Shown: positions 39,835-64,000 of the stretch, piece by piece
Numbering within the stretch: the first letter of the stretch is position 1
Layout of the letters: each line of letters begins with the position of its first letter
NCBI RefSeq assembly: GCF_046119375.1
Contig: NW_027362767.1
Span: 90,024,001-90,088,000, forward strand
Direction: 5' to 3'
Origin: Phyllobates terribilis
Lineage: Eukaryota
DNA length: 64,000 bases
The notes under the pieces: model-generated
What the model saw: the letters and a program-made list of their open reading frames with translations, nothing else
What the model was told of the DNA's origin: nothing
Database searches by the model: none
Position numbers and translations under genes: made by a program

Positions 39835-42800
39835 TGCTGAGGTGCCAGATTCTGAGACCTCCGGTGCCTGGTGCTGAGACCTCCGGTGCCTGGTGCTGAG
39901 ACCTGCAGTGCCTGGTGCTGAGACATCCGATGCCAGGTGCTGAGACCTCCGGTGCCAGGTCCCGAGACATTCGTTGCCAGGTGGTCATACCTAAATTGTC
40001 AGGTGCTGAAACATCCGGTGCCAGGTGCTGAGACATCCGATGCCAGGTGCTGAGACCTCCGATGCCTGGTGCTGAGACCTCCGGTGCCTGGTGATGAGAC
40101 CTCCGGTGCCAGGTCCTGAGACTTCCAGTGCCAGGTGCTGAGACATCCGGTGCCAGGTCCTGAGACATCCAGTGCCAGGTGCTCGTACCTAAAGTGTCAG
40201 GTGCTGAAACATCTGGTACCAGGTGCTGAGACATCCAGTGCCAGTTGCTGATACCTCTGGTGAAAGGTGCTGAGACCTCCGGTGCCTGGTGCTGGGACAT
40301 CCGGTGCCAGGTTCCAAGACATCAGGTGCCAGGTGCTCATACCTAAAGTGTCAGGTGCTGAAACATCCGATGCCAGGTGCTGAGACATCCGGTGCCAGTT
40401 GCTGAGACCTCCGGTGCCTGGTGTTGAGACCTCCGGTGCCTGGTGCTGAGACCTCCGGTGCCTGGTGCTAAGATCTCCGGTGCCAGGTCACGAGACATCC
40501 GGTGCCAGATGCTCATACCTAAAGTGTCAGGTGCTGAGACATCTGGTGCCAGGTCTCGAGACATCCAGTGCCAGGTGCTGAGACATACGGTGCCAGGTCC
40601 CGAGACATCCAGTGCCAGTTGTTGAGACATCCGGTGCTAGATCCTGAGACATCTGGTGCCAGGTGCTCATACCTAAAGTGTCAGTTGCTGAAACATCTGG
40701 TACCAGGTGCTGAGACATCCAGTGCCAGTTGCTGAGACCTCTGGTGAAAGGTGCTGAGACCTCCAGTGCCTGGTGCTGAGACATCCGGTGCCAGGTTCCA
40801 AGACATCAGGTGCCAGGTGCTCATACCTAAAGTGTCAGGTGCTGAAACATCCGGTGCCAGGTGCTGAGACATCCGGTGCCTGGTGCTGAGACCTCCGGTG
40901 CCTGGTGCTGAGATCTCCGGTGCCAGGTCCCGAGACATCCGATGCCAGATGCTCATACCTAAAGTGTCAGGTGCTGAGACATCTGGTGCCAGGTGCTGAG
41001 ACATCCGGTGTCAGTTGCTGAGACCTCCGGTGCCTGGTGCTGAGACCTCCGGTGCCAGGTGCTTAGACAGCCGGTGCCAGGTCCCGAGACATTCAGTGCC
41101 AGGTGCTGAGACATACGGTGCCAGGTCCCGAGACATCCAGTGTCAGGTGCTAAGACATCCGGTGCTAGATACTGAGACATCTGGTGCCAGGTGCTCATAC
41201 CTAAAGTGTCAGGTGCTGAGACATCCGGTGCCAGGTGCTGAGACATCCGGTGCCAGTTGCCGAGACCTCCGGTGCCTGGTGCTGAGACCTCCGGAGCCTG
41301 GTGCTGAGACCTCTGATGCCTTGTGCTGAGACCTTCAGTGCCAGGTGCTGAGATATCCGGTGCCTGGTGCTGAGTTCTCCGGTGCCAGGTCCCGAGATAT
41401 CCGGTGCCAGGTGCTCATACCTAAAGTGTCAGTTGCTGAGACATCCGGTGCCAGGTGCTGAGACATCCGGTGCCAGTTGCCGAAACCTCTGGTGCCTGGT
41501 GCTGAGACTTCCGGAGCCTGGTGCTGAGACCTCTGATGCCTTGTGCTGAGACCTCCAGTGCCAGGTGCTGAGACCTCCGGTGCCTGGTGCTGAGACCTCA
41601 GGTGCCTGACGCTGAGACCTCCGGAGCCTGGTGCTGAGACCTCTGATGCCTGGTACTGAGACCTCCGGTGCCAGGTGCTGAGACAGCCGGTGCCAGGTCC
41701 TGAGACATTCAGTGCCAGGTGCTGAGACATCCGGTGGCAGGTCCCGAGACACCCGGTGCCAGGTGCTCATACCTAAAGTGTCAGTTGCTGAAACATCTTG
41801 TACCAGGTGCTGAGACATCCAGTGCCAGTTGCTGAGACCTCTGGTGAAAGGTGCCGAGACCTCCGGTGCCTGGTGCTGAGACATCCGGTGCCAGGTTACA
41901 AGACAGCAGGTGCCAGATGCTCATACCTAAAGTGTCAGGTGCTGAAACATCCGGTGCCAGGTGCTGAGACATCCGGTGCCAGTTGCTGAGACCTCCGGTG
42001 CCTGGTGCTGAGATCTCCGGTGCCAGGTCCCGGGACATCCGGTGCCAGATGCTCATACCTAAAGTGTCAGGTGCTGAGACATCTGGTGCCAGGTGCTGAG
42101 AGACATCCGGTGCCAGTTGCTGAGACCTCTGGTGCCTGGTGCTGAGACCTCCGGTGCCTGGTGCTTAGACAGCCGGTGCCAGGTCCCGAGACATTCAGTG
42201 CCAGGTGATGAGACATACGGTGCCAGGTCCCGAGACATCCAGTGCCAGGTGCTGAGACATCCGGTGCTAGATCCTGAGACATCTGGTGCCAGGTGCTCAT
42301 ACCTAAAGTGTCAGTTGCTGAGACCTCCGGTGCCTGGTGCTGAGACCTCCGGTGCCAGGTGCTTAGACAGCCGGTGACAGGTCCCGAGACATTCAGTGCC
42401 AGGTGCTGAGACATACGGTGCCAGGTCCCGAGACATCCAGTACTAGGTGCTGAGACATCCGGTGCTAGATCCTGAGACATCTGGTGCCAGGTGCTCATAC
42501 CTAAAGTGTCAGTTGCTGAGACATCAGGTGCCAGGTGTTGAGACATCCGGTGCCAGTTGCCGAGACCTCCGGTGCCTGGTGCTGAGACCTCCAGTGCCAG
42601 GTGCTGAGACCTCCGGTGCCTGGTGCTGAGACCTCCGGTGCCTGATGCTGAGACCTCCGGTGCCTGGTACTGAGACCTCCAGCGCCAGGTGCTGAGACAG
42701 GCGGTGCCAGGTCCTGAGACATTCAGTGCCAGGTGCTGAGACATCCGGTGCCAGGTCCCGAGACATCCGGTGCCAGGTGCTCATACGTAAAGTGTCAGGT

Positions 42801-42901
42801 GCTGAGCCATCCGGTGCCAGGTGCTGAGACATCCGGTGCCAGGTGCTCATACCTAAAGTGTCAGGTGCTGAGACATCCGGTGCCAGATGCTGAGACCTCC
42901 A
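39835..42901. repeat. 22-bp satellite, about 139 monomers, with variant units
   Basis: Consensus GTGCTGAGACATCCGGTGCCAG; recurrent 22-bp variant GTGCTCATACCTAAAGTGTCAG. Confidence 0.95.
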
Positions 42902-44938: not shown

Positions 44939-45447
44939 TGCTATCACTGACTTGAGGCTGTAGGAGCAGTGACGTCATCGGGAACCACAGCGCCATCTAG
45001 TGTCTGTTCCGTAGTGTAAATCTTTCACTCCTTCCACCACTAGCTAGCGTCAATTGGAGAACATTGGACACAGGGGCTGCTCTTCAGCGCCACCTAATGC
45101 TCACTCTAGTGTCCTGACATCCAGGTAATTCCAATCACACTTCTTCCGCCTCTTCTATCTGTGGGGAGCGATGCCGCACCTGGACCTGACTGGACTAATA
45201 ATAAGTCTGTGCTGTCTAGTACTCTGACAGACACCAGGTCCGGGCTGAGAGACTCTATTATGTGTGTGGGGGGGTGGGGGGGAGAGCTGATTGGACGAGG
45301 GTCAGTCTGAACTTGTGACTGACAGCAGCTCCTCCAATCAAAACTCTCAGTCACTAACCACAGCCCCAGAAAGTGGGAGGAGTCTGTGTTATTGGAAAGA
45401 AACTAGTGCGGACAAGTAAGAGGTGCTGAGTCCGGAGCAACAGCCAA

Positions 45448-47655
45448 GGAGGTGTGATGTCAGAGGGAGTGTGCATGCGTGTGGCCAGGGAGGTGTGATG
45501 TCAGAGGGAGTGTGTGCATGCGTGTGGCCAGGGAGGTGTGATGTCAGAGGGAGTGTGTGCATGCGTGTGGCCAGGGAGGTGTGATGTCAGAGGAAGTGTG
45601 TGCATGCGTGTGGCCAGGGAGGTGTGATGTCAGAGGGAGTGTGTGCGTGCGTGTGGCCAGGGAGGTGTGATGTCAGAGGGAGTGTGTGCATGCGTGTGGT
45701 CAGGGAGGTGTGATGTCAGAGGAAGTGTGTGCATGCGTGTGGCCAGGGAGGTGTGATGTCAGAGGGAGTGTGTGCGTGCGTGTGGCCAGGGAGGTGTGAT
45801 GTCAGAGGGAGTGTGTGCGTGCGTGTGCCCAGGGAGGTGTGATGTCAGAGGGAGTGTGTGCGTGCGTGTGGCCAGGGAGGTGTGATGTCAGAGGGAGTGT
45901 GTGCGTGCGTGTGGCCAGGGAGGTGTGATGTCGGAGGAAGTGTGTGCATGCGTGTGGCCAGGGAGGTGTGATGTCAGAGGGAGTGTGTGCATGCGTGTGG
46001 CCAGGGAGGTGTGATGTCAGAGGGAGTGTGTGCGTGCGTGTGCCCAGGGAGGTGTGATGTCAGAGGGAGTGTGTGCGTGCGTGTGGCCAGGGAGGTGTGA
46101 TGTCAGAGGGAGTGTGTGCATGCGTGTGGCCAGGGAGGTGTGATGTCAGAGGGAGTTTGTGCATGCGTGTGGCCAGGGAGGTGTGATGTCAGAGGGAGTG
46201 TGTGCATGCGTGTGGCCAGGGAGGTGTGATGTCAGAGGGAGTGTGTGCATGCGTTTGGCCAGGGAGGTGTGATGTCAGAGGGAGTGTGTGCATGCGTGTG
46301 GCCAGGGAGGTGTGATGTCAGAGGGAGTGTGCATGCGTGTGGCCAGGGAGGTGTGATGTCAGAGGGAGTGTGTGCATGCGTGTGGCCAGGGAGGTGTGAT
46401 GTCAGAGGGAGTGTGTGCATGCGTGTGGCCAGGGAGGTGTGATGTCAGAGGGAGTTTGTGCATGCGTGTGGCCAGGGAGGTGTGATGTCAGAGGGAGTGT
46501 GTGCATGCGTGTGGCCAGGGAGGTGTGATGTCAGAGGGAGTGTGTGCATGCGTGTGGCCAGGGAGGCGTGATGTCAGGCTATGTGCCCACGATGCAGAAA
46601 TGCTGCATATTTTTTCCGCTTCTCCCTGGCAGGAAAAACGCATGCGGATTTTACATGCGTTTTTCCCGCCAGGTAGAAGCGTTTGTGAAGCGTCTTTGCA
46701 TGCATTTCTGCATGCGGGTTATCAAACGCTTTTCCAAGAGATTTTAGCATCACTTGGAAAAGTGCTTGACAACTTGTTCACACTATATAAATCCATACAA
46801 TCGGCATATATAGTGTGACCAAGTAATAGTTAAAAAAAAAAGAATAAGAATGGTAAAAAATAAAAAAAATAGATTATACTCACCTTCCGATGTCCTCCCG
46901 GTGTTTTCTCCGCTGCATCCGGTGTCTTGGGCGGCTCCCGGTGACTGGTCACATGACTCAATGACGTCATGGCAGGTGCTTCACAACACCGCGACCCATA
47001 CAGCAGATCAGACGGAGGGGAGAATACACCGGGAGGACATCGGAAGGTAAGTATAATCTTAATTTTTTATTTTAAATTCTTGATTTAACAGGTTCTATGG
47101 TACCTGGGTCTGGAGAAGAGTCTCCTCTTCTCCAAATCCGGGTACCATCCGCACATTGAACCGTGTGATATCCGCTTGTGCAGATGCAGTGAGGCGGATG
47201 TCACGCGGTCCAATGCAAGTCAATGGCGGCGATTACGCTGCATGTCCGCAAAATTAATGGACATTCTGCGTATTTTTCCGCAATGATAAGCCACAGCGGA
47301 AATTTCCACAGTATGTGCACAGCACATGCGGATTATCATTGGGGACCATGGGGCACGTATTACCAAGCGTTTTTTAAGCGTTTTCACTGCGGAAATTCTG
47401 CGGCAAAAACGCTTGAAAAACGCATAGTGGGCACGCAGCCTCAGAAGGTGTGTGTGCGTGTGGCCAGGGAGGTGTGATGTCAGAGGGAGTGTGTGCGTGC
47501 CTGTGGCCAGGGAGGTGTGATGTCAGAGGGAGTGTGTGCGTGTGGTCCGGGAGGTGTGATGTCAGAAGGAGTGTGTGCATGCCTGTGGCCAGGGAGGTGT
47601 GATGTCAGAGGGAGTGTGTGTGTGCGTGTGGCCAGGGAGGTGTGATGTCAGAGGG
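45448..47655. repeat. 43-bp minisatellite (about 26 + 5 copies) interrupted by a MITE
   Basis: Unit GAGGGAGTGTGTGCATGCGTGTGGCCAGGGAGGTGTGATGTCA. Confidence 0.95.
46577..47440. mobile_element. PIF/Harbinger-like MITE, 864 bp, 3-bp TSD TCA
   Basis: TCA at 46574-76 and 47441-43; TIR GGCTATGTGCCCACGATGC / GCATAGTGGGCACGCAGCC; the satellite phase resumes after it. Confidence 0.85.
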
Positions 47656-47854
47656 TGTGTGTGTGTATAAAATTGTGTGTCTAATTGTGTGCTCCTATGT
47701 GTGTGTAATTGTGTGCTCCTATATGTGTATATGTAATTGTGTGCTGCTATATGTGTGCATGTAGTTGTGTGCTCCTGTGTGTATAATTGTGTAACTCCTA
47801 TATATGTGTATGTAATTGTGTGCTCCTGTGTGGGTGTGTGTGTGTGTGTGTAAG

Positions 47855-48660: not shown

Positions 48661-50832
48661 TTTTCCTGCTCGGCAATAGGTGCGGAACTTATATAGGGAC
48701 AATAGGGTAGTCAAGGTGGTATTAGATCTGCCTAGGGGTCTCCACTCCTCCTTTCTCTATTTGTTGGGCTCCCTTCCCACTCTTCCCGTTGTTGTACACT
48801 TGTTTCTTCCCTCACCTTGCATGACACTACTGTGCTGCCCCCTGCTGTACCTGGTGTAGCCTACACTTCTCTATCAGGGCAGTCTGTCATTTGTAAAGCA
48901 CAATCGCTCTGTTCAGACTCGGCACACGTGTCTGCTTTGTTCTGTTATCGGAGGCCTAGGTCACATCTGTGTTATAGCTTCTGGTACAGACGGAGACCAG
49001 GATGAGTGCCAGACCGTCAGACACCAGCAGAACCCTTCAGTGCGGTTTCCATGTGATGATCTGTGCTGGAGGCTTCAGACAGAACCAGAGACACAAATGT
49101 GATCGGAGCCTAATATTTGCAGGTTGGTTCTGGTACCAGATCCATGTTCTAGGCTTGGTTATGTTACTGATATTTACAAATGCCAGGTTCACCGCAGCAA
49201 ATCAGACATGTATTTACAATAGGATCTATGGATTTCTGCTCCTACTGTGCCGTGCGCCCTGTATACCCCAACTGAGTGCAGGACCCCTGGGGGGCACAGT
49301 CCACATCATGACAGGGAGATTTTTACAGTTATGTAGCTACATTTTAATTCCCTTCTTCTAAGACCCAAAAAATTTTAATTTTTCCATCAACATTGTCGTG
49401 TGAGGACTTGTTTATTGAGACACGAGTTGTAGTTTAGAGCAAGAACATTAATTTTACCATATAATCAATGTACTGAAAAAAGGGGAAAAATCCACAGGGT
49501 GACCTACACTGTTATTTGGATCTTATTTCTTAAGGTGTTCGTTGTGCGGTAAAGATGATTTGGAAACTTGATCCTACCATTCTATAAGACTGCGGTGATT
49601 GACCAAACTTACAAGAATTTTTTTTCATATTTTAGTAGTTAAAAAAAATTGAGAACTTTGTAAAATAAAAATTCAGTTTGCGTCGCTACTTTCTGGGACA
49701 GGTGACATTTTTCTGTTTGCTCTGATGAACCTGTGAGAGTTTTTTGTGCTGAGCTGTAGATTTTTTGATATCTTGGTGAGATAGATGAGAAGTTTTGGTG
49801 GCTTTAATTGTATTTTTTAGGAAGTGCAGCAACCAATAAAGAGAAATTCTGCCATTTTGAGTTTTTTCCTTCTCATCTTTTAACATTACAGTTACAGATG
49901 TGGCGATATAAAACATTTTTTAGGAGGATTTAAACTTTTATATTTTTAATTTCTTTTATATTCTGTAAATATTAGTTTTACTTTAGGGAAAAAAATCAAA
50001 TGAGAAAAAATGCACAATCAATGTGTAGTAGTGAGATGAAGCCTATAATAATTACAGCACAGCCTAACGTCGTAATCATCTGTGGAAAGGAGAAAGCTTC
50101 ACCGACAGGTTTAGTGTTGGACAGTTTTGATTGTTTCATGTTATTTGAGCAACTGAAGAGGAACCTCGTGCTGGAGAAGTGTCCAGACTATGGGATATAC
50201 GGCCACTGTACGGCCATGAAACTGTCTGCTGCCCATAGCAACCAATCACAGTGCAGCTTTCATCTCTCATTGTGCTCTTTTACAGTGAAAGCTGCGCTGT
50301 GATTGGTTGCTATGGGTAACACAGACTGTTCCTTGTACACTGTGTTATAAAAGAGCCACGCTGCCCCCATATAGCACTGTTACGCTCCGTGCACAATGGC
50401 GGCAGCTCCGCTGTGTGCATCGGATAAATGACAATGTACAGAGAAGTCATGACATGTGGCGGACACATTTGTTGTCTTTACGGTTTATAGACGATGGTCT
50501 ATACAAAATCATTACATCCATCTTCCAGGACTAGATAGATTCTGGTAACAATACACTTTTATTGACCTCTCCAGTGGCGGAATACAAAATACCGTCATAT
50601 ACAGAGATAATATGTGATGTGTCTGGACAATCCCATGTAAGGAGTTTATCAGGCCTCCATTAATAAGTATGGCCGCTCCAGGAAATCTAGTTCTTCATAG
50701 TAAAATAGAGCGGATCCGTCCTGTACACGGTATTACAGATATACTGCACACATGGCAATCACTGGAGCCCGGGTCACATTGTACATAGAGCAGATATAAC
50801 AGACTCCTTGGTGGTCCCTCGTGTAGCGCCGA

Positions 50833-53800
50833 TCACTTGCAGCAGCTGCAGGTGTCACATCCATCGCTGCACTCACAGCCCTGGCTGCACTTACTGCACT
50901 CAGCCGGACAGCAGGAGCAGCAGCCTGGGGAGGAGACACTGGTGAGAAGACTGCAGGAATGGCGGACGTCACATAGTGTGCACAAGGACAAAACACAAGG
51001 GTTAAAGGAAACTCAACATGATATTACACACGGAAGAATTTGTAGGACTGTATAGGCGCTTGTACCCCAATTAAAATGAGACCTTTTTGTAGAAATCCAA
51101 TTTTCTAGTCATAATCAATCTAGTGTCAAGTCATATGCAAGTCAGGTAGGAAGTGCACCGGGGGCTAGAAGCAGCCCAATTACACTGACACGCCCCCAGT
51201 GCACTTCCAGCCTGATTTGCATATGGCTTCTACACTAGATTTCTCATTACAAGCCAATGGGATTTCTACGAGAAAGGTATCATTTTTATTAGGAAAGAAG
51301 CGCCTATAGAAGCATACCACTAATTACATATGTAGAAAATGTGCTGACAGGTTCAATTTGAAGGAATTTCTCAGACATTTATGACATGGATATTCACGGC
51401 CATCAGTTTTCACTGACTTGAATGGAGGAAGTCGTAGAACATTCTAGGTCTTGCATTCATTCCTCAATAGAAAATCCAACAGAAGAAGAATCATGCCATG
51501 CTCCCCCCATGCTGTAATTTAGTAAAGCTTCTGTGGCGCCCCTGAGGGTTCAGTCGCCACAGAGGTACTGCACCTCACCCAGAGGTGCGGTGTCTCCCTT
51601 CTCTCAGGTAAGGAGGGAGTGCTGCCCGGAACCCCAACACCTGCATCAAACACTACACTGCTACAGGCCGGCAGGAAGGGCAAGACGCAATGTATGTTTC
51701 TGCTGAGCCCTGACCCTGGGAACCAGTAGTGGGTGTGGATGGAGGAAGTAGTTAGTGGGAGCACTTTAGTAGGAGTATATATAGGGAAGCCATCTTAGGG
51801 TGGCAAATGAGTCAGGTCAGTAGAGGAGAGCAGTTCAGAAGAACAGTCTGGGAGCAGAGTCTCACTAGGAGCTCTGCTCCACAAGTAGGGCCTAGTGATA
51901 GAGGCCCAGGAGGGGAGCAGGGAGTTGGCTCCGTTCTGTTGAAGGGATCCTAGGGGGTATAGCGAGTGCAGGAAGGCACCCGTACGCGCCTCATCTGTCA
52001 GAAGACAGAGGGATTGTAGGCCGCAAGAAGGGGACCGGCCCCTGGCCCAGTTGTGTACTTCAAGTCCCAGCTGGAAAAACCGGAAGCTCCTGGCTTATAT
52101 AGTCAGTTGCTGAAGCCGCATTCTAATCCCCAGGAGGGTCAAGCAGGTCCGGGAACTCCGACGCACAGGAGGGACTTCAGAGCACCCGAGCGGGATTGAG
52201 AGTGGGCAGCGCAGGGCAGGAGGGAGAAAGACCCAGCATGAAGTTGGTCTAGCTAGGAACACGAGAAAGTGGGGTTCTGTCAGGCATTCCTAAATCACCT
52301 GAGGAAGAACTGAACCCCTGCCTGGTGAACACAGCGCGACATGGGAGGCTAGCAACTGTACGGCGCATCCGTGGAACCGTCATAATAACTGTGAGTAAAG
52401 ACTCGGATGACTGCACCGTGCTGCCTCTGTCCATTCTTTGATCTGCGCCATCTCTCCCCCTGCACTACAACACCCAGCGCAACCACCATCTACCTACTCT
52501 GCCCTGGAGCTTGCTCTACCTGTGGAGAGCCACACCATCCCTGCTGCCGTAACACCAGCTCCAGAGGACTGCTCCGCAGCGGCGGCACCCCTTAGCCGCA
52601 TTCCACAGGTGGCGTCACGAACAATCCCAAAAATCCCATATAAAAGTATCCCCTTTTTGCACTGACCGCCTTGGGTCACGGACCGGGCCAGCCGCCGTGA
52701 TACTCCCCTACCGGCAAACCCAGAGGCCCGGCTGCCGAGTAGCCCACGGCCCTGGGGGCGCGTCACTTCTATGGGAGAATATCACTGTACCTGGTGGAGC
52801 ATATTATATAGTATGGACTCACAGGGACATCTGTATTCAAGCTTGTAATGTTCTACACAGTTTTGATATTTTTTTCATCTATCTCTATTTTTAAGAACCC
52901 AAAGATGAAATCATGATGTTGGAGCTTTTGCTTCCATATTTAATATTTCTTCTAGATTTTAAAGAGGTTGACCACTACTTGGACAAACGCTTCTCATTTC
53001 TCAATTTTGGCCCCGTTAAAATAAAAACCCCTATACTCCCCTCCGGTGCCGGTACCGTTCCACCGGTGTCAGCACTCACATTCCTGGGGCTCACATGAGG
53101 TTGTTATGTCACCTGAACCCTGAGCCCGATCAGCGCTGGCGTCACTGTCGCCTCCTTCACACAAATCGAACATCAAGAGGAAGTCAGAGGTCAGCCGCAG
53201 CCGAGACTTCCCGCTGATATTCAGTAGATCCGAAGGTGAGGACAGTGACGCCGGCGCTGATTGGGCACAGGGCTAGTGTGACGTAACAACCGCACATGAG
53301 CCCTGGAAACACGAGTGACGACACCACTGGGACGGCACCGACATCGGAGGTGAGAATAAGTGTTTTTACTTTAACAGGGCCAAACTTGAGGTACGAGAAG
53401 GGGTTGTGCAAATAGTGGACAATCCCTTTAAGGGGTACTCGGGGCTTAAGAGAAATATATGCAGTAACTCTACGTGACTGCAAATTGATGAACCATTACA
53501 ATGTACAATGGCACACTGACCACAAGGTTTCCCTCCATTTACAGAGAGGGCGATCTTGTGCCGACTAGATTCTCATCCACTACACTTAAATGGGTTGTCC
53601 CCTGTCAGTTAATCCTGGGCACAGTTTGGTAAAAAAAAAAAGGTCACTGGTTGGTTGTCCCCCACAAATAGTCAAGTAATATGTAGCATATCATAAGCCC
53701 AATTATAAAATTTCCTTTAGACATATTCAAAACTCAATAAGGAACAAAAAGGGTCTGGTTAGAAACTATATAAAGGGATCAATAAATATATGGTGATGGT

Positions 53801-54950
53801 TTGGGGGGCCTTAATGAAGCTGAGAGATTCCCTTTAACTGAAATAGGACAATCCGTTTGTTCTATTGAGACAATCGGATGAGAATCTAGTCGGCATGTGA
53901 CCGCCCTCTCACTATGGAGTAGAGGGGAGTCCTGACACTGTGCACATTGCAGCAGTTCGGCAATCTGCAGACACATCGAGTGACTGCAGAAAGATTTCTT
54001 CAGTCTGGAAAACACCTTTCAGGATAGTCTTTCAGGGTAATTACATTCTAAGCTATGCACATTGCCATTTAGTGCAGCGTGCCCTAAGAATATTCTCACC
54101 TTTATATTTGTTTATTCAGATCCTTTGTGCTTATAACCAGAAAACCGACTCTGAAGTAGTATGTATAGTAGGCGCTCGGTGCCCCATTAGCGGTGCTCAG
54201 CGGTCCGGAGCACCTTCCTTATGTCAGTTATTCCTCGCTGCATTGAGAACCTAATTTACTTATCACATCAAAGTCGTCTTTGATTATTCTTTGGATAAGC
54301 CGTCCTCTATGGCGATCTGCATTTTGCCCTCATAGACTTCCTGTAATATTTTATTATTCTATAAAAAATGAAAGATTCTCTTGACAGATTGAATTAATTT
54401 CTATGAACTAAGAACGGACATCAGTGTGCATTATGTCTAGTTGGAAATTGTATATATAGGATGGATGTAGAGCATACATGTATACTCACTTTTTTTGCAT
54501 GTTGGACATTTGCAGTTCTTACATTTGCAGGATTCTCCGCAGGTACAAGAAGCTCCTAAGAGGGAAACAGGAGTTTTATCATGGAGCAGAAAATGACATA
54601 TATTCAATGATCATCAAATGCTATAGATCTGATACTCGCCACAATAAACACTATTCTCAGCGGCAGCACACACAACTATACAACCCATTAGACAGTCAGA
54701 AATACACAATGTTAGATTAAAAATCCCGACATTGTAACATTTCTCTTTAAACCACAATAATGTAGATGTTTTGCTACAAACATCGCTATAATTATTCTGA
54801 TTGTAGTAAAAATATTCAGAGTATTGTCTTAGCATTGCCCAAAATGGATCTGAGCTCCAGGCTACACCTGCATTTAGTTTCCTGCAATGTCTCTATATCC
54901 AGTGTAATCCCCTTCTTACCTGATGAGCAGTTACAGTCCTGAGGGTCCAT
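50833..54950 (-). CDS. MT: Metallothionein, paralog 1 (62 aa)
   Basis: Exons 54950-54920, 54555-54490 and 50924-50833, all GT-AG, give [62 protein letters not shown]; AATAAA (minus) at 50563-50558. The exact ortholog name (mt4/mt-a) is not resolvable from sequence. Confidence 0.97.
51532..52765. mobile_element. Solo LTR (Gypsy-like), 1234 bp, 4-bp TSD, in MT intron 2
   Basis: TG...CA termini (TGTGGCGCCCC / GGGGCGCGTCA); CTTC duplicated at 51528-31 and 52766-69. Confidence 0.85.
52958..53430. mobile_element. Palindromic TTAA-flanked MITE in MT intron 2
   Basis: TTAAAGAGGTTGACCACTA ... TAGTGGACAATCCCTTTAA with mirrored interior. Confidence 0.7.
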
Positions 54951-55029: not shown

Positions 55030-55141
55030 TTTTATACACAAGATACTGAGCTGAGTGCAAACTCTGCCCATAAGTCAGTGCACCCCCCGCCCAGTCACAT
55101 CCACATGTGTAAGGACAGTGTACAGTGAGGAGCTGTGTGCA
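55030..55141 (-). promoter_or_regulatory. MT paralog 1 promoter: TATA, three MREs, ARE/GC box, E-box
   Basis: TATAAAA 55036-55030; MRE cores (TGCRCNC) at 55053-59, 55079-85 and 55135-41; GTGACTGGGC (ARE consensus) at 55098-55089; CACATGTG nearby. Confidence 0.85.
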
Positions 55142-55611
55142 AACCTGCAGAGTCACATAGACGGGGATGATCCAACAGAAATGTCTGTGATTTACAGTCA
55201 CTGTATTACAATTACTATAATACCTCTAAGTATAAGCGCATTACTTATTCATATCCAACTTCTTACAATATCTTTATCCAGAGATTATTATATGTTCTGC
55301 AAATGTTGTTACTTTTCAATAAAGAATCTACATAAATCTGCTTATGGTTTAAAATAAGAAACAAAGTATTAATTATAACTTGCATATGAAAAAGTGTTAA
55401 TAAATCGGACACATAGAGTTTGGAAGAGTGATGTTTCTCCTTAGGTCATGTAGACACAAGCTGCACAGATGATTGCATGTAAATGATATGTCACCAGATA
55501 AAGTGGAATTCTTCTTTGTATCTACAGTCAGGGGCTTTTGTATGAATTCCTAAGAAATGGGATTCAGACGTTTCCCAGACAGAGTCGCTGACATCAATAA
55601 GGCAAACATTA

Positions 55612-55710
55612 ATCATCTTTATTTTTATATAGCGCTAACATATTCCGCAGCACTTTACATACATTATTATCATCACAGTCCCCATTGGGGCTCACAATCT
55701 AGATATTAAT
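55612..55710 (-). mobile_element. L2/CR1-type LINE 3' tail fragment
   Basis: The reverse complement reads GTAAAGTGCTGCGGAATATGTTAGCGCTATATAAAAATAAAGAT, a typical amphibian L2-like 3' end. Confidence 0.5.
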
Positions 55711-55836
55711 AATTGGATATTGTCTGACCTTCTTTCCGGTAGTGTCTATCTTTTTACCTGGACACATTAGCATATTCTACTATGGAGCCCCCATCGGAGC
55801 CATTAATGGGGGCACAGGAGTGTGAGTGCAGCCTTA

Positions 55837-57023
55837 GATGAGTGCAGTGTGGTGAGTACAGGGATGTTCAGGCTGGGTGTGATGAGATGAGTGCAGTGTG
55901 GTGAGCACAGGGCTGTTCAGGCTGGGTGTGATGAGATGAGTGCAGTGTGGTGAGTACAGGGATGTTCAGGCTGGGTGTGATGAGATGAGTGCAGTGTGGT
56001 GAGTATAGGGTTGTTCAGGCTGGGTGTGATGAGATGAGTGCAGTGTGGTGAGCACAGGGCTGTTCAGACTGGGTGTGATGAGATGAGTGCAGTGTGGTGA
56101 GCACAGGGATGTTCAGGCTGGGTGTGATGAGATGAGTGCAGTGTGGTGAGTACAGGGTTGTTCAGGCTGGGTGTGATGAGATGAGTGCAGTGTGGTGAGT
56201 ACAAGGATGTTCAGGCTGGGTGTGATGAGATGAGTGCAGTGTGGTGAGTACAGGGCTGTTCAGGCTGGGTGTGATGAGATGAGTGCATTGTGGTGAGTAC
56301 AGGGTTGTTCAGGCTGGGTGTGATGAGATGAGTGCAGTGTGGTGAGTACAGGGCTGTTCAGGCTGGGTGTGATGAGATGAGTGCAGTGTGGTGAGTACAA
56401 GGATGTTCAGGCTGGGTGTGATGAGATGAGTGCAGTGTGGTGAGTACAGGGCTGTTCAGGCTGGGTGTGATGAGATGAGTGCAGTGTGGTGAGTACAGGG
56501 TTGTTCAGGCTGGGTGTGATGAGATGAGTGCAGTGTGGTGAGTACAGGGCTGTTCAGGCTGGGTGTGATGAGATGAGTGCAGTGTGGTGAGTACAGGGCT
56601 GTTCAGGCTGGGTGTGATGAGATGAGTGCAGTCTGGTGAGTACAGGGCTGTTCAGGCTGGGTGTGATGAGATGAGTGCAGTGTGGTGAGTACAGGGCTGT
56701 TCAGGCTGGGTGTGATGAGATGAGTGCAGTGTGGTGAGTACAGGGTTGTTCAGGCTGGGTGTGATGAGATGAGTGCAGTGTGGTGAGTACAGGGCTGTTC
56801 AGGCTGGGTGTGATGAGATGAGTGCAGTGTGGTGAGTACAGGGTTGCTCAGGCTGGGTGTGATGAGATGAGTGCAGTGTGGTGAGTACAGGGATGTTGAG
56901 GCTGGGTGTGATGAGATGAGTGCAGTGTGGTGAGTTCAGGGCTGTTCAGGCTGGGTGTGATGAGATGAGTGCAGTGTGGTGAGTACAGGGTTGTTCAGGC
57001 TGGGTGTGATGAGATGAGTGCAG
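55837..57023. repeat. 49-bp minisatellite, 24.2 copies, each with an MRE core
   Basis: Unit GATGAGTGCAGTGTGGTGAGTACAGGGCTGTTCAGGCTGGGTGTGATGA; GAGTGCA recurs at exact 49-bp spacing from 55840 to 57016. Confidence 0.97.
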
Positions 57024-57333
57024 GGCTGGAGGTGACGGCTGTGTGCAGAGATGGGGGATGTAGAAAGTGTAGTCCAGGCTGAGTGCACACTGATCATTTC
57101 TCCTGCTGAGGTCACACTGCACACAGCACTAAATCATCTCTGGGGAACAGGAACAAGAACCATGATTAACTCTTTGATAGCAGCTGCAGCTAAATAATGA
57201 AAACGGGGATATCGGCTAACAGTTATTTGCATATAGCTGTAGGATGGGCCCTGAGGATAAATTCCTCCTGTGGGCCCCTGACACCCCAGTCCGACACTGG
57301 ATAAAATCATTCAGTAGCGCTACAAAATGTCAC

Positions 57334-58106
57334 TCGGTCCTATTTGTCTACCCTTTTATATGCATTACTTCAACTTTGATATACAGTAAGGTTTTTAATA
57401 TAGGCAGTATAGGTACCGTCCCAATTTAGGGTCACCTTGCCGCTGGTGGGACGGCTTGTATACTTTTTTTGATCAAAAATAGTTCACTAAGTACCCTATA
57501 TTTATTATGCAACTTTGCTTTACATTTATATATAATTATGGTAGGGTATGAGATATATTTTTGTCTTGCTTCTTTTTTTTTTTTTTTTTTTCTTTTTTGC
57601 TAGTGTGAACATGCCTCTGTTTCTTGTATGTCTGCCATCTTAGACCTCAGTTCACATTGTCTGGTTTTTTGACTTGTTTGCATTCTGTGCAATTTAAGGG
57701 TGTGGCATGCCCTTTGTTGAGCTGATTGGTGTGTATGTAGCTTACCACGGGCCTAGGTGGTCTGGAGTTGGGACTCGGTCCTATTTGTCTACCCTTTTAT
57801 ATGCATTACTTCAACTTTGATATACAGTAAGGTTTTTAATATAGGCAGTATAGGTACCGTCCCAATTTAGGGTCACCTTGCCGCTGGTGGGACGGCTTGT
57901 ATACTTTTTTTGATCAAAAATAGTTCACTAAGTACCCTATATTTATTATGCAACTTTGCTTTACATTTATATATAATTATGGTAGGGTATGAGATATATT
58001 TTTGTCTTGCTTCTTCTTTTTTTTTTTTTTTTCTTTTTTGCTAGTGTGAACATGCCTCTGTTTCTTGTATGTCTGCCATCTTAGACCTCAGTTCACATTG
58101 TCTGGT
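57334..58106. mobile_element. 773-bp insertion with two direct terminal repeats of about 334 bp and a 10-bp TSD (Penelope pLTR/TRIM-like)
   Basis: 57332-57665 matches 57773-58106 apart from the T-run; AAAATGTCAC is duplicated at 57324-33 and 58107-16. Confidence 0.8.
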
Positions 58107-58426
58107 AAAATGTCACAGTGTAGCCCCGGCCTCACGTGAACACTTAGGAAGGTCTTCATCTATTAAATAAGTATAATTTCTTCGTTATCGATGTTGTTGG
58201 GTAAACCAATATATCAGGGATTTCCAAGCATTGCCATGATCCTGAATGTCACATCTGTTAGATACACAGTGTAGCCCAGAAAATGCTCTTCAAGAAGGTG
58301 TATATGAATAAGTAAAGCGCTTATATTTATATCATTACATAGAATGATTAAGGTGACTGCTGGTAACAATGTCCGTCACCATAGACATGTCTGCCGGGTC
58401 ATACTTTGTCCTGGGGGGCTGCAGGT

Positions 58427-58531
58427 TGCACACAGCACCTCCTTGTTTGTCCTGACACATGTGGATGTGATGTGGGCGGTGGGTGGTTTGTGATCAGGGT
58501 TTGCACTCAGCTCTGTATCTGCTGTATATAA
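58427..58531 (+). promoter_or_regulatory. MT paralog 2 promoter: MREs, E-box, GC box, TATA
   Basis: TGCACAC 58427-33, CACATGTG near 58456, GGGCGG near 58474, TGCACTC 58502-08, TATATAA 58525-31. Confidence 0.85.
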
Positions 58532-58610: not shown

Positions 58611-60755
58611 ATGGACCCTCAGGACTGTAACTGCTCAGCAGGTAAGAAGGGGATTGCACTGGACCTGTTACATGTAGTAGTGCTGAGTGCGTTAATTAGT
58701 TGTTTTCTTAGATGTTCCTCTGGTTTAATGTAGGACTGCGTGCTCTTCTATTCAGAGAAACAATATAATGTGTTGGACAGGAGGAAATGATCCCATTCCA
58801 TTTAAAAAATCATCTTCACCATCAGATTCCATATAGTGACTTTTACTAAACGCTGGATGGAAACAAGGACGCAGCGCTGGCCATATGTGATACCTGCCTT
58901 AATGGAAATATTTGGGCCAACTTGTTAAACACTTAGGGCAAAGACAATACAATAGGAGATAATTCTTACTACAATCAGAACAAGTTGGAAATATAAAATG
59001 ATGTCGATTGCAGTAAAATATCTTTACATTAACGTGATTTAAAGACAAATGATACAATGTGAGAATGTTCTTCTATCCTTGTGTTCTTCTTACTCTGCCT
59101 AATGGGATGTATTCACACAGTGCAGCTGGCGCTGATGTACATAGCGGTACAAGCATGTCTGCAGGAGCTGACAATAGTGTATACTGTGAGGAGGACATTG
59201 GAAAGAAATCCATGGTGTATGATGGTGACTGAATGTACTGAATATTCTGCTCCATGATAAAATTCCTGCTTCTCTTAGGTGCTTCTTGTACCTGCAGAGA
59301 ATCCTGCAAATGTAAGAACTGCAAGTGTACAACATGCAAAAAAAGTGAGTATACAGGAGCTATAGATAGAAATACATAGCATCTCTAGCCAGACTTTATA
59401 CACTGTATTGTTTATGTAGTTTAAACCTTATTGATTTATATAAAATAAATCTGTCATCTTTAACTTCAGGCCTTTTAGAGATCATTTCATCTTCAACTTG
59501 CTTAACTGTTTAGAATAACAGTAATTTTGACCAGGGGTGCCCAAACTTTTACATGCCACTGTCATAGTATTATTATTAATAGCATTATTATTATTGCTTT
59601 TATAGGGTTTCATTATTCATTATATTATTATCATCATTAGTAAAAAAATAAACTGAAAATACTGAAAAAAATATTAAGAAAAGTAAAATAAAAGCTTCAA
59701 ATTCATGCTATGATATTGGGCCCTAAAACCTATCTTACTGTATATACCTCAAGTAAATTTGATGCTGGCACTAATAAAGGATATGTGATGAAGGATAATT
59801 GTAAATAACTGTGAAACATATTTAATAATGGTGAGCTTAAGGCCGGGTTCACACGAGCGTATTTTACGGTCCTTGTATGGATGGCAATTATCAGACTAAA
59901 CTGCAGATCTGCTGACCCGAACTTACTGACTGATAGACACATATGAAGCTTTAAAGGGAATCTGTCAGCAGGTTTTTGCTATGTAATCTGAAGACAGCAT
60001 GAGTTAGGGGTTAAAACACAGATTTCAGTGATGCCTCTCTTATCAGGCTAGCAATTTTGTTTGCTTGCAATGATGGTTTTAGCACCAGGAGCTGGGACAC
60101 AGCATGCGCATGCTAGACCGACACGCCCCCTCCTATGATAGGCAGCTCACTGTCTATGGACATTGTATATACCAAGCCTGGTGTGGGCGGGGTTAGCTTC
60201 CTCAGCTCTGCTGTATTGCTAAATCTAAAAACTCTGATTTTGTCAGAACGGCTGCACCCAGTAAAGTAAGTGATACATCATCGGATTCAGCTTCTCTTTG
60301 CCTACATCAAGCCACTCTTGGATGAGGTAGCAAAAATCCACTGACAAATTCCCTTTAAGCTTGAGTCTGGAGACCCGTCGCCAGACCAGGCATTGTGGTT
60401 CGTATATGGACTGTGAAATACGCTCTTGGGTATTCCTGCCACACATACTCCCAGACGCAGCATCTAGGTACAGAATTAATGTGGAGGTAATTTATCATGA
60501 GCTGCGGCTTCCTATATTCACTTCCATGGAAACAGGCGAGGTTATATATCCTGTGGATTGGAAATTAATGCTCACGATTGTCAATGTGCTTACTAGAAAT
60601 CAAAATGTTGTATCTCTACAATCTCTGTATACAGCAGTCTTCTCACCAGTGTCTCCTCCCCAGGCTGCTGCTCCTGCTGTCCGGCTGAGTGCAGTAAGTG
60701 CAGCCAGGGCTGTGAGTGCAGCGATGGATGTGACACCTGCAGCTGCTGCAAGTGA
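58611..60755 (+). CDS. MT: Metallothionein, paralog 2 (62 aa)
   Basis: Exons 58611-58641, 59279-59344 and 60664-60755, all GT-AG, give [62 protein letters not shown]; AATAAA at 61017-61022. Confidence 0.97.
59950..60359. mobile_element. TTAA-flanked MITE in intron 2 of MT paralog 2
   Basis: TTAAAGGGAATCTGTCAG ... CTGACAAATTCCCTTTAA. Confidence 0.75.
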
Positions 60756-61389
60756 TCGGCGCTACACGAGGGACCACCAAGGAGTCTGTTATATCTGCTC
60801 TATGTACAATGTGACCCGGGCTCCAGTGATTGCCATGTGTGCAGTATATGTGTAATACATGCTGATGATGTAACTGCTCTTCTAATGTAAAGTATAGATT
60901 TCCTGTACCTGCCATACTGTATAATGCTGCCCTGCTACACTTCTCACTTATGTTCCTCCTTATCTGTACACAATCTTATATTATTTCTGTATATCAAAGT
61001 CTTTTTCTATTCCACCAATAAAGAAGCCAATAAAAATATATTAATTGTTATCAAAAAGATCAAGTCTTGTAAGATGTTTAATCACTCTATACTGATCCTC
61101 ATCTATATAATGTAACAGCAGTAACTGTGTCCACCATGTGCTAATTATCCATGGCCGGCGTCTGCACCCGGCACACCCTCTTGCTCAGGGCCCCAGCATA
61201 GGGGTGGCTGTCCTGCAGCTCCGTCGTCTCCTGCCACTGTGACGTGTCAGGGCAGAGGGTGCGATGACGTCACTACAGCACGCCTTCTGCTCTGAGCGTC
61301 ACAGTGCAGCGACTGAGCCAGATGACGGTGACGCTGGAGTCCTGACCTGACGCAGCAAGGAGAGGGGAGTATTTGATTTTTTTTTCTTT

Positions 61390-63757
61390 TATGTATGGAG
61401 CTATATATGGGGCCTATACTGCATGGAGCTATATATGGGGTCCATTTATCTGTATAGAGCATTATATGGGGTCCATTATTCCGTATGCAGCATTATATGG
61501 GGCCCATTATTCTGTATGGAGCTATATATGGGACCCTTACTGTATGGAGTGTTATATGGGGTCCATTATTCTGTTTTGAGCATTATATGAGGCCCATTAT
61601 TCTGTATAGAGCATTATATGGGGCCCATTATTTTGTATGGAGCTATATATGGGGCCCATTATTCTGTATGGAGCATTATATGGGATCCATTATTCTGTAT
61701 GGAGCTATATATGGGTCCCATTATTCTGTATGGAGCATTATATGGGATCCATTATTCTGTATAGAGCATTATATGGGGTCCATTATTCCGTATGCAGCAT
61801 TATATGGGGCCCATTATTTTGTATGGAGCATTATATGGGGCCCATTATTCTGTATGGAGCTATATATGGGTCCCATTATTCTGTATGGAGCATTATATGG
61901 GATCCATTATTCTGTATAGAGCATTATATGGGGTCCATTATTCCGTATGCAGCATTATATGGGGCCCATTATTCTGTATGGAGCTATATATGGGGCCCTT
62001 ACTGTATGGAGTGCTATATGGGGTCCATTATTCTGTTTTGAGCATTATATGAGGCCCATTATTCTGTATGGAGCATTATATGGGGCCCATTATTTTGTAT
62101 GGAGCATTATATGGGGCCCAATATTCTGTATGGAGCTATATATGGGGCCCATTATTTTGTATGGAGCATTATATGGGGCCCATTATTCTGTATGGAGCTA
62201 TATATGGGGCCCTTACTGTATGGAGTGTTATATGGGGTTCATTGTTCTGTTTTGAGCATTATATGAGGCCCATTATTCTGTATGGAGCATTATATGGGGC
62301 CCATTATTTTGTATGGAGCATTATATGGGGCCCATTGTTCTGTATGGAGCTATATATGGGGCCCATTATTCTGTATGGAGCATTATATGGGGTCCATTAT
62401 TCTGTATAGAGCATAATATGGGGTCCATTATTCCGTATGCAGCATTATATGGGGCTCATTCTTCTGTATAGAGCTATATATGGGGCCCTTACTGTATGGA
62501 GTGCTATATGGGGTCCATTATTCTGTTTTGAGCATTATATGAGGCCTATTATTGTGTACGGAGCATTATATGGGGCCCATTATTTTGTATGGAGCATTAT
62601 ATGGGGCCCATTATTCAGTATGGAGCTATATAGGGGGCCCATTATTTTGTATGGAGCATTATATGGGGCCCATTATTCTGTATGGAGCTATATATGGGGT
62701 CCATTATTTTATATGGAGCGTTATATGGGGCCCATTATTCTGTATGGAGCTATATATGGGGCCCATACTGTATGGAACGCTATATGGGGTCCATTATTCT
62801 GTATATTATTATTATTTATTGTTATAGCGCCATTCCTTCCATGGCGCTTTACATGTGAAAGGGATATACATAGCACAAACAGTTACAATAAATTTGAACA
62901 ATACAAGTTGGCGACTGGTACAGGAGGAGCGAGGACCGTGCCCACGAGGGCTCACAGCCTACAAGGGATGGGCGAGGATATAGTAGGTGGGGGTATAGAG
63001 CATTATATGAGGCCCATTATTCTGTATGAAGCATTATATGGGGCTCATTATTCTGTATGAAGCATTATATGGGGCTCATTATACTGTATGGAGCATTATA
63101 TGGGGATCATTATTCTGTATGGAGGACTATGTGGTGCCCATAATACTGTATGGAGGACTATGTGGTGGCCATAATACTGTATGGAGCACTATGTGGGGCC
63201 ATTATATTGTATGGAGAATTATATGGGGATCATTATTCTGTATATTATTATTTATTATTATAGCGCCATTCCTTCCATGGCGCTTTACATGTGCAAGGGA
63301 TATACATAGCACAAACAATTACAATAAATTTGAACAATACATGCCGGCGACTAGTACAGGAGGAGCGAGGACCCAGCCCGCGAGGGCTCACCATCTACAA
63401 GGGATGGACGAGGATACAGTAGGTGGGTGTATAGAGCATTATATGAGGCCCATTATTCTGTATGACGCATTATATGGGGCTAATTATACTGTATGGAGCA
63501 TTATTTGGGGATCATTATTCTTTATGGAGGACTATGTGGTGCCCATTATACTATATGGAAGAATATGTGGTGCCCATAATACGGTATGGAGGACTATGTG
63601 GTGGCCATAATACTGTATGGAGGACTATGTGGTGGCCATAATACTGTATGAAGGACTATGTGGGCCCATTATACTGTATGGAGGATTAGATGGGGATCAT
63701 TATTCTGTATGGAGGACTGTGTAGTGCCCATAATACTGTATGGAGGACTATGTGGTG
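61390..63757. repeat. 31-32-bp satellite with two embedded LINE-tail segments
   Basis: Unit TATTCTGTATGGAGCATTATATGGGGCCCAT; non-satellite inserts at about 62800-63000 and 63240-63432. Confidence 0.92.
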
Positions 63758-64000
63758 AGAATAGGGATGTTCAGGCTGGGTGTGATGAGATGTACAGCAC
63801 CATGGAATCAATGGTGCTCTCAAAATAAATAATATTAATATTATATTACTACTTTTTATTTTTAATACAGATGGAAGCATTTTCTCAGCTCTGCCAGTAG
63901 GTGTCAGTAGCACTCAGTGTAACAGCATCACGGAAAGATCGGGAGACAGAAAAGCAGAATCTGGGGAAATAGTGGAAAAGTGCAAATACATGGATGGATG

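What the first reader, a model, noticed from the sequence alone, without database searches (positions are those of the whole stretch)
55837..57124. Minisatellite array of 25 metal-response-element cores between two divergent metallothionein promoters
Seen: a 49-bp unit repeated 24.2 times. Each unit carries GAGTGCA (TGCACTC on the minus strand, the same core as the TATA-proximal MRE of both MT genes), and all 25 cores are intact while other unit positions vary. Single-copy MRE cores follow directly (57041-47, the double GAGTGCACAC at 57081-90, and 57118-24). The array lies about 0.8 kb from one TATA box and 1.5 kb from the other. Established: TGCRCNC is the MTF-1 core, and multimerised MREs give strong Zn/Cd inducibility in reporters. 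Inference: tandem expansion of one MRE has built a shared, copy-number-variable MTF-1 enhancer that could tune metal tolerance. Caveats: the cores lack the GC-rich MRE flank, and a fragment of the unit recurs near 63765, so it may derive from a dispersed repeat.
Basis: partly seen in the sequence, partly recalled or inferred. Interest (0 to 1): 0.88.

Follow-up and report, generated by a model that had tools for sequence, protein, structure and literature searches.

The report
Young minisatellite carrying metal-response cores
A real 49-base repeat with 25 copies of the metal-switch core motif lies between two back-to-back metallothionein genes of a poison-frog-like genome, but the copies match only because they descend from one unit, so a role as a metal-sensing enhancer is possible and unproven.

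Summary
A 49-bp x 24.2 array (55836-57023, 96% identity) carries TGCACTC on the minus strand in all 25 in-register units. It lies 0.8 kb and 1.5 kb from the TATA boxes of two head-to-head metallothionein genes.

The functional reading has no sequence support:
- Only 10 of 49 columns vary, and 18 of 49 seven-column windows are invariant, so an intact core is expected (P=0.18).
- 16% of the window is tandem repeat.
- A second minisatellite (45443-46577) also carries a core and has lost it in about a third of its units.
- The Engystomops and Xenopus MT loci have three proximal cores each and no upstream array, so the array is lineage-specific.
- The 3' flank is ATCTC, not GC-rich, although the unit matches these genes' own proximal MRE at 12 of 13 bases.

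Origin is unsettled. Forty-two of the 49 bases recur at 63753-63794 without the core. The unit and both array edges are also the window's best non-self matches to MT exon 3, where GAGTGCA encodes Glu-Cys-Ser.

Best reading: a young, probably near-neutral minisatellite. MTF-1 binding is plausible and untested.

Earlier scan notes on this genome report many minisatellites built from local functional sequence. None covers this array.

The parts
55836..57023 (.). 49-bp x 24.2 minisatellite. Every unit carries TGCACTC on the minus strand (GAGTGCA on the plus strand).
   Evidence: TRF. 25 in-register cores. Unit table with 10 variable columns.
55815..55835 (.). 5' edge of the array. It holds one more core (55824-30) in a degenerate partial unit and matches MT exon 3 at 21 of 26 positions.
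57024..57127 (.). Degenerate 3' edge with four cores (57041-, 57081-, 57084+, 57118+). Three of them read TGCACNCAGC, like the promoter MREs.
55030..55141 (-). Left MT proximal promoter: TATA at 55030-36 and MRE cores at 55053 (TGCACTC), 55079 and 55135.
58427..58531 (+). Right MT proximal promoter: MRE cores at 58427 (TGCACAC) and 58502 (TGCACTC), and TATA at 58525-31.
50833..54950 (-). Left metallothionein gene (3 exons, 62 aa).
   Evidence: Inverted-repeat arms.
58611..60755 (+). Right metallothionein gene (3 exons, 62 aa; 87% identical to the Ranitomeya variabilis MT). Exon 3 is 60664-60755.
55265..58292 (.). Unique spacer between the arms of the inverted MT duplication. Promoter homology ends at about 55265 on the left and about 58292 on the right.
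63753..63794 (+). A 42-nt copy of the unit (unit positions 13-49 plus 1-5). It lacks exactly the 7 nt AGTGCAG and is fused to the end of a 31-bp minisatellite at a shared TGTGGTG.
55628..55812 (+). A SINE-like head (TATAGCGC..CTTTACA..GGCTCACA) followed by one degenerate 31-bp-type unit, just upstream of the array. The region upstream of the 63753 copy has the same elements in the same order.
57334..58106 (.). A 773-bp insertion flanked by the direct repeat AAAATGTCAC. It separates the array from the right promoter. Without it the array would lie about 0.7 kb from the right TATA.
   Evidence: read directly

Best explanation
The feature is a young, lineage-specific minisatellite. It grew by replication slippage or unequal exchange in the 3-kb unique spacer of an inverted metallothionein gene duplication, in a genome that produces minisatellites abundantly.

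The 25 MRE cores are identical because they descend from one founding unit. Selection is not needed to explain them.

The founding unit came from local or nearby sequence. There are two candidates: a relic resembling MT exon 3, in which GAGTGCA would be the Glu-Cys-Ser codons, or a piece of the neighbouring repeat complex.

Each unit offers a full 7/7 core with a weak, non-GC-rich 3' flank. The array may therefore recruit some MTF-1 when zinc is high. Its net effect on the two MT genes is most likely small or nil.

Shown here: the anatomy, the lack of core-specific conservation, the absence from two other frogs, and the abundance of repeats. Inferred: near-neutrality and the origin of the unit.
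For: Array structure:
- The array is 96% identical.
- Outside one hypervariable column, units differ at about 1% of positions.
- Both edges are degenerate, as expected for slippage growth.

Core invariance is not special:
- P=0.18 for a 7-column block.
- 18 of 49 seven-column windows are invariant.

Repeat background:
- 16% of the window is tandem repeat, with 11 arrays of at least 200 bp.
- Random 49-mers hold a core 4-7% of the time.
- The 43-bp array at 45443-46577 also holds a core, in only 17 of about 26 units.

Comparison with other frogs: the Engystomops (L001) and Xenopus laevis (L002) MT loci show three proximal cores each and no tandem repeat in 10 kb upstream.

The MRE flank:
- The unit's 3' flank is ATCTC.
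- The published MRE is the 7-bp core plus a less conserved GGCCC (PMC11503025).
- MREs that share the core differ in MTF-1 affinity (PMC7503544).
- In a CUT&RUN study, the JASPAR MTF-1 motif was not enriched in MTF-1 peaks (PMC10047149).

Origin:
- A 42-nt copy without the core lies at 63753.
- The window's three best non-self matches to exon 3 are the array's 3' junction, its 5' flank and the unit.
- The unit against exon 3 gives P about 0.003, and about 0.005 after removing the shared 9-mer.
Against: - The array sits exactly between two MT promoters.
- The unit's site matches these genes' own proximal MRE at 12 of 13 bases (TGCACTCA.CTCA, P about 0.03).
- Those promoter MREs themselves lack the canonical GC-rich flank, so the missing flank is a weaker argument in this species.
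- TGCRCNCAGC is enriched, with 11 hits against 1 expected. Nine lie in the MT locus and three within 90 bp at the array's 3' edge. This could mark a genuine distal MRE cluster from which the array grew.
- Multimerised MREs drive metal-inducible reporters (PMC4879176).
- Tandem repeats holding tens of homotypic TF motifs can be strong enhancers (PMC13373173).
- The array is too young for any conservation test to have power. Absence of a signal is not evidence of neutrality.
Confidence: 0.6

Rival explanations
1. One reading: the array is a working, shared MTF-1 enhancer. Twenty-five in-phase MRE cores recruit zinc-loaded MTF-1 and boost metal induction of both divergent MT genes. Copy number sets the strength.
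For: - All 25 units have a full 7/7 core, and it is the same heptamer as both TATA-proximal MREs.
- The match to the proximal MRE extends to 12 of 13 bases.
- Promoter-type TGCACNCAGC sites are clustered at the 3' edge.
- The array lies 0.8 kb and 1.5 kb from the two TATA boxes. The second distance was about 0.7 kb before the 773-bp insertion.
- 4xMRE reporters are metal-inducible (PMC4879176).
- Distal MRE-bearing enhancers cooperate with proximal MREs in non-mammalian MT promoters (PMC1913499).
- Homotypic-motif tandem repeats can be potent enhancers (PMC13373173).
Against: - The core is not conserved beyond expectation.
- The array is absent from the Engystomops and Xenopus MT loci.
- The unit lacks the GC-rich flank, and the G at +2 that all four promoter MREs keep is a T.
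- By a general flank-similarity measure the unit is unexceptional: 7 of 14 flank positions match, a level that 8% of background cores reach.
- Motif presence predicts MTF-1 occupancy poorly (PMC10047149).
- The genome makes minisatellites from many kinds of local sequence (scan notes).
Confidence: 0.25
2. Origin-level rival, compatible with either functional outcome: the unit is a decayed piece of metallothionein exon 3, a pseudo-exon left in the spacer by the rearrangements that duplicated the gene. The apparent MRE core would then be the codons GAG-TGC-AG (Glu-Cys-Ser) read on the opposite strand.
For: - Scanning exon 3 against all 80-nt tiles of the window on both strands, the three best non-self hits are the array's 3' junction (19/22), its 5' flank (21/26) and the unit. 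All are on the plus strand and collinear.
- The unit aligns over 45 of 49 nt (P about 0.003). After the shared TGAGTGCAG is removed, P is still about 0.005.
- Collapsing the array between its two edge GAGTGCAG copies gives 25 of 30 ungapped matches to exon 3. The score is 35, against a null of 14.2 +/- 2.4 with a maximum of 25.
- MRE-like motifs inside MT transcripts are reported in earthworms (PMC12783039).
- Scan notes describe other minisatellites in this genome built from exon junctions (unchecked).
Against: - Single BLAST HSPs have E of 0.1-5 in a 1.5 kb x 7 kb search.
- The margins over background are small: 29, 27 and 26 against 25, 24 and 23.
- The three hits share one 9-mer and are related to each other by descent, so they are not independent.
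- The collapsed construct was chosen after seeing the data.
- No homology to intron 2 lies next to the array (P=0.56), and homology to the 3'UTR side is only marginal (P=0.02).
Confidence: 0.3
3. Origin-level rival: the unit belongs to, or was copied from, a dispersed or locally duplicated repeat complex of the form SINE-like head, then 31-bp repeats, then the 42-nt segment. The MT spacer holds one copy of that complex in which the last segment expanded.
For: - A 42-nt copy with 3 mismatches lies at 63753-63794. It scores 69, against a 99th percentile of 24 for window tiles.
- The motif TATAGCGC..CTTTACA occurs only three times in the window. All three are on the plus strand: once 180 bp upstream of the array, and twice in the complex that ends in the 42-nt copy.
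- One degenerate 31-bp-type unit lies between that head and the array (P about 0.007).
- Both places therefore share the same three elements in the same order and on the same strand.
Against: - The flanks of the two copies are otherwise not alignable.
- The 42-nt segment is absent from the first two periods of the 436-bp higher-order repeat, so it is not a regular part of that complex.
- It is as similar to the array units as they are to each other. This fits a recent patch copied from the array at a 7-nt microhomology.
- The window has no other copy.
- Genome-wide copy number could not be measured with these tools (one search found nothing, which says little).
Confidence: 0.35

Closest known systems
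Metal response elements (MREs) of metallothionein promoters, bound by MTF-1
   Same: The full 7-bp core TGCRCNC is present in every unit, and it is the same heptamer as the genes' own TATA-proximal MRE. MREs normally occur in multiple copies and work in either orientation (PMC4879176).
   Different: - The less conserved GC-rich 3' half (GGCCC, PMC11503025) is absent.
- The sites are spaced at exactly 49 bp and lie 0.8-2 kb from the promoters, not within about 200 bp.
- They are not conserved in other frogs.
- Binding is untested.
Synthetic multimerised MRE reporters (for example 4xMRE)
   Same: Tandem head-to-tail copies of one MRE core. In reporters such constructs give MTF-1-dependent Zn/Cd induction (PMC4879176).
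   Different: The synthetic constructs use a high-affinity MRE with its flank. MREd is the strongest mouse element (PMC7503544). Here the flank differs, the spacer is 42 nt of unrelated sequence, and the setting is natural chromatin.
Distal MRE-bearing enhancers of non-mammalian MT genes
   Same: These are MRE-containing elements several hundred bp upstream that cooperate with proximal MREs. Promoter alleles that differ in MRE number differ in inducibility in Orchesella cincta (PMC1913499).
   Different: Those enhancers hold one or a few MREs together with other sites such as ARE. They are not a homogeneous 25-copy minisatellite.
Tandem-repeat enhancers made of homotypic TF motif clusters (the MORC3-repressed IFNB1 element with 45 PU.1 sites)
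   Same: A tandem repeat in which every unit carries the same TF motif, placed near the gene that the TF regulates (PMC13373173).
   Different: In that case binding, enhancer activity, repression and cross-species conservation of motif accumulation were all shown. None of these is shown here.
Ordinary vertebrate minisatellites (VNTRs)
   Same: A G/T-rich unit of 10-100 bp, high homogeneity, degenerate edges, one hypervariable column, and non-coding with stops in all frames.
   Different: Nothing sets it apart structurally. Only its position and the chance-or-descent presence of the MRE core are notable.

Membership tests
Metal response element (MTF-1 site) | 7-bp core TGCRCNC | tested here: met
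   25 of 25 units read TGCACTC on the minus strand.
Metal response element (MTF-1 site) | Less conserved GC-rich 3' half (GGCCC) of the 12-bp MRE (PMC11503025) | tested here: not met
   The unit flank is ATCTC. This genome's four promoter MREs have AGCTC or AGCAC, so the feature is only partly present even in the bona fide promoters.
Metal response element (MTF-1 site) | Zinc-dependent MTF-1 binding and metal-inducible activity | not testable with these tools
   This needs EMSA, CUT&RUN and reporter assays.
Metal response element (MTF-1 site) | Conservation of the site in related species | tested here: not met
   No upstream array is present in Engystomops (L001) or Xenopus laevis (L002), which have only three proximal cores each. 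Closer relatives (Ranitomeya) gave no DNA.
Metal response element (MTF-1 site) | Core more conserved than the surrounding unit positions | tested here: inconclusive
   There are no variants in the core, but P=0.18 and 18 of 49 windows are equally invariant. The array is too young for the test to have power.
Minisatellite / VNTR | Head-to-tail array of a 10-100 bp unit with degenerate edges | tested here: met
   TRF gives 49 bp x 24.2 at 96%. Edge units are degenerate.
Minisatellite / VNTR | Copy-number polymorphism among individuals | not testable with these tools
   Only one assembly was readable. The exact-protein look-up found the same record with no DNA.
Tandem-repeat enhancer with homotypic motif cluster | Tens of copies of one TF motif in a tandem repeat near a target gene | tested here: met
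   25 cores lie 0.8 kb and 1.5 kb from two MT TATA boxes.
Tandem-repeat enhancer with homotypic motif cluster | TF occupancy and enhancer activity | not testable with these tools
   No chromatin or reporter data are available.
Dispersed-repeat (TE-derived) satellite | The same unit at other loci with shared flanking element structure | tested here: inconclusive
   One 42-nt copy lies 6.7 kb away, preceded by the same head and 31-bp-type motif. The flanks are otherwise unalignable, and the genome-wide count is unavailable.

The most novel reading that the evidence does not exclude
A natural 25-copy MRE minisatellite acts as a bidirectional, zinc- and cadmium-inducible enhancer shared by two divergent metallothionein genes of a dendrobatid frog. 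Its copy number varies among individuals and sets the amplitude of MT induction. It could have been born from MT coding sequence, whose Glu-Cys-Ser codons happen to spell the MTF-1 core.
Probability: 0.15. Interest if true: 0.7.

Novelty: new member of a known kind. Interest (0 to 1): 0.3.

Why it matters
If the array binds MTF-1, it would be a natural counterpart of the synthetic multimerised-MRE reporters. It would also be a VNTR that could tune metal tolerance by copy number. This would be a concrete case of regulatory novelty produced by a genome's general tendency to amplify short local sequences.

If it does not bind, it is a caution. In a minisatellite-rich genome, any motif present in a founding unit appears as an impressive array of sites next to a relevant gene, and the identity of the copies says nothing about selection.

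The possible exon-3 origin adds a second caution. Cys-rich MT coding sequence itself spells the MRE core on its antisense strand.

Tried and rejected
Comparative data from close relatives:
- The Ranitomeya variabilis MT locus and this genome's own record were found but returned no DNA because the files are too large.
- The exact-sequence cluster look-up of both MT proteins found nothing.
- Only Engystomops and Xenopus could be read.

Genome-wide spread of the unit:
- A 24-mer scan of the metagenome contigs found nothing.
- The scan's own sequence index returned nothing.
- Neither blank is informative.

Extended homology between the spacer halves, which would show that the inverted duplication reaches the array: none was found beyond about 290 bp upstream of the TATA boxes.

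Homology of the array flanks to the flanks of the 63753 copy: none was found beyond a generic SINE-like piece.

Flank similarity of the unit's site to the four promoter MREs: unexceptional, with 7 of 14 positions matching, a level that 8% of background cores reach.

BLAST of the array flanks against the MT genes: HSPs had E of 0.1-5, not significant on their own.

Relationship between the 49-bp and 43-bp units: P=0.05, so it was dropped.

Papers on fine mapping of the MRE and on MRE enhancer multimers (PMC362737, PMC454951, PMC3478646) are not held.

Full report
**What is there.**

Tandem Repeats Finder reports one array at 55836-57023: period 49, 24.2 copies, 96% matches, no indels. A search for TGCRCNC finds 25 minus-strand TGCACTC matches from 55840 to 57016, spaced at exactly 49 bp. 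Further cores lie at 55824, 57041, 57081, 57084 and 57118.

The window holds two three-exon metallothionein genes, head to head:
- The left CDS is 50833-54950 on the minus strand, with its TATA at 55030-36.
- The right CDS is 58611-60755 on the plus strand, with its TATA at 58525-31.

The two genes are arms of an inverted duplication. Promoter homology ends about 290 bp upstream of each TATA, which leaves a unique spacer at about 55265-58292. The array lies in that spacer, 800 bp from one TATA and 1502 bp from the other. A 773-bp insertion flanked by the direct repeat AAAATGTCAC (57334-58106) accounts for half of the larger distance.

**Whose genome.**

The MT protein is 87% identical to a Ranitomeya variabilis metallothionein, and other frogs and turtles follow. 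The exact protein lies at two places on one 470-Mb NCBI record, so a third MT gene exists outside the window.

**Is the core protected?**

No test shows it. Laying out the 24 full units shows variation in only 10 of 49 columns. There are 25 mismatches in all, and 13 of them fall in one hypervariable column. The chance that a given 7-column block escapes is 0.18. Eighteen of 49 circular 7-column windows are invariant, and the core lies inside a 24-column invariant run. The copies are alike because the array is young or still being homogenised. Intact cores therefore carry no information about selection.

**How surprising is a core in a minisatellite here?**

- Sixteen percent of the window is tandem repeat, with 11 arrays of at least 200 bp.
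- Earlier notes of this scan describe many minisatellites in this genome that look like amplified local functional sequence, such as splice sites, histone 3' signals and X-boxes (unchecked).
- A random 49-mer carries a core 4-7% of the time.
- A second array, 43 bp x 26.5 at 45443-46577, also carries one (TGCACAC). Only 17 of about 26 units keep it, and the rest have mutated it.
- Degenerate GT-rich repeats downstream of the Engystomops MT gene carry the same heptamer.

**Comparison with other frogs.**

The MT loci of Engystomops pustulosus (L001) and Xenopus laevis (L002), each with 10 kb of flank, show three cores just upstream of the promoter. Neither has a tandem repeat in the 10 kb upstream, and neither has a second divergent gene. 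The array is therefore not an old frog feature. Closer relatives could not be read.

**How good is the site?**

Published descriptions give a 12-bp MRE: the conserved core plus a less conserved GGCCC (PMC11503025). MREs with the same core differ in MTF-1 affinity and activity (PMC7503544). In a human CUT&RUN study, the JASPAR MTF-1 motif was not enriched in MTF-1 peaks (PMC10047149).

The unit reads TGCACTC followed by ATCTC. This genome's four promoter MREs read TGCAC(A/T)C followed by AGC(T/A)C, so they too lack the classic flank. The unit matches the left proximal MRE at 12 of 13 bases (P about 0.03) and differs at the G that all four promoter sites keep.

Three of the four cores at the 3' edge carry the promoter-type AGC extension. 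TGCRCNCAGC occurs 11 times against 1 expected, and nine of those hits are in the MT locus. These points favour some real MRE-likeness. Two things weaken them. The edge sites look like degenerate units and so are not independent of each other. A general flank-match measure also rates the unit as ordinary.

**Where did the unit come from?** There are two leads, each at roughly P = 0.01.

*First lead: a nearby repeat complex.*
- Forty-two of the 49 bases recur at 63753-63794 with three mismatches. That copy is fused to the end of a 31-bp minisatellite at a shared TGTGGTG, and it lacks exactly AGTGCAG, the core.
- Both places are preceded, on the same strand and in the same order, by a SINE-like head and by 31-bp-type units. 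The head occurs nowhere else in the window.
- Beyond these elements the flanks do not align.

*Second lead: MT exon 3.*
- When MT exon 3 is scanned against the whole window, its three best non-self matches are the array's 3' junction (19/22), its 5' flank (21/26) and the unit. All are on the plus strand and collinear.
- The unit aligns over 45 of 49 bases (P about 0.003). The alignment still stands after the shared 9-mer is removed (P about 0.005).
- Collapsing the array gives 25 of 30 ungapped matches.
- On this reading GAGTGCA is Glu-Cys-Ser read from the other strand. MRE-like motifs inside MT transcripts have been noted in earthworms (PMC12783039).
- The weaknesses are real. BLAST E-values for single segments are 0.1-5, the hits share a seed, and the collapsed construct was chosen after the fact. 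I treat this as a lead and not a result.

**Mechanism and verdict.**

The array most likely arose and is maintained by slippage and unequal exchange, and the core was carried along from the founding unit. It offers 25 full cores with weak flanks. That could recruit MTF-1 at high zinc, because multimerised MREs work in reporters (PMC4879176), distal MRE enhancers cooperate with proximal ones in non-mammalian MT genes (PMC1913499), and homotypic-motif tandem repeats can be strong enhancers (PMC13373173).

Nothing in the sequence shows that this one does. My estimates are:
- about 0.6 that it is near-neutral;
- about 0.25 that it measurably enhances metal induction;
- about 0.15 for the full copy-number-tuning story.

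The decisive data are a genome-wide and cross-species search for the unit, MTF-1 binding assays, and reporters with graded unit numbers.

Noticed in passing
window 45443-46577 and 47448-47663: A 43-bp minisatellite (26.5 plus 5 copies) carries the MRE core TGCACAC in 17 units and a mutated form in the rest. It is split by an insertion of about 870 bp (46578-47447) that has imperfect terminal inverted repeats of about 19 nt (GGCT..GTGCCCAC), which looks like a MITE.
   Followed up: partly
window 57334-58106: A 773-bp insertion made of two direct repeats of about 335 bp around a core of about 105 bp. It is flanked by the 10-bp direct repeat AAAATGTCAC and lies between the array and the right MT promoter.
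   Followed up: no
window 50730-50954 and 60634-60858: A 225-nt tract covering exon 3 is 100% identical between the two inverted MT genes. The promoters are only about 88% identical. This fits recent gene conversion.
   Followed up: partly
outside the window (record of GCA_046119375.1): A further gene on the same 470-Mb record encodes a protein identical to the right MT gene, with a gene span of 3114 bp against 2145 bp. The MT family therefore has at least three members on this chromosome.
   Followed up: no
window 61392-63755: A 31-bp minisatellite complex with a 436-bp higher-order period. Each period holds a SINE-like head (TATAGCGCC..CTTTACA..GGCTCACA). A possibly related 31-bp array lies at 33075-33636 on the other strand.
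   Followed up: partly
window 55836-57023, plus strand: Each unit contains GGTGAGTA, a consensus 5' splice-site sequence, giving 24 tandem copies that point toward the right MT gene. The unit has no CpG at all.
   Followed up: no
window 39841-42900: A 3-kb array of a 22-bp unit (139 copies, 77% matches). It is one of 11 arrays of at least 200 bp, and tandem repeats cover 16% of the window.
   Followed up: no
L001 14363-15221: Degenerate GT-rich tandem repeats just downstream of the Engystomops MT gene carry about nine TGCACAC cores. This shows that such repeats often spell the MRE core.
   Followed up: no
window 60684-60720 and 50868-50904: MT exon 3 contains two full MRE cores on its antisense strand (GAGTGCA, Glu-Cys-Ser codons). 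One of them carries the promoter-type AGC extension.
   Followed up: partly
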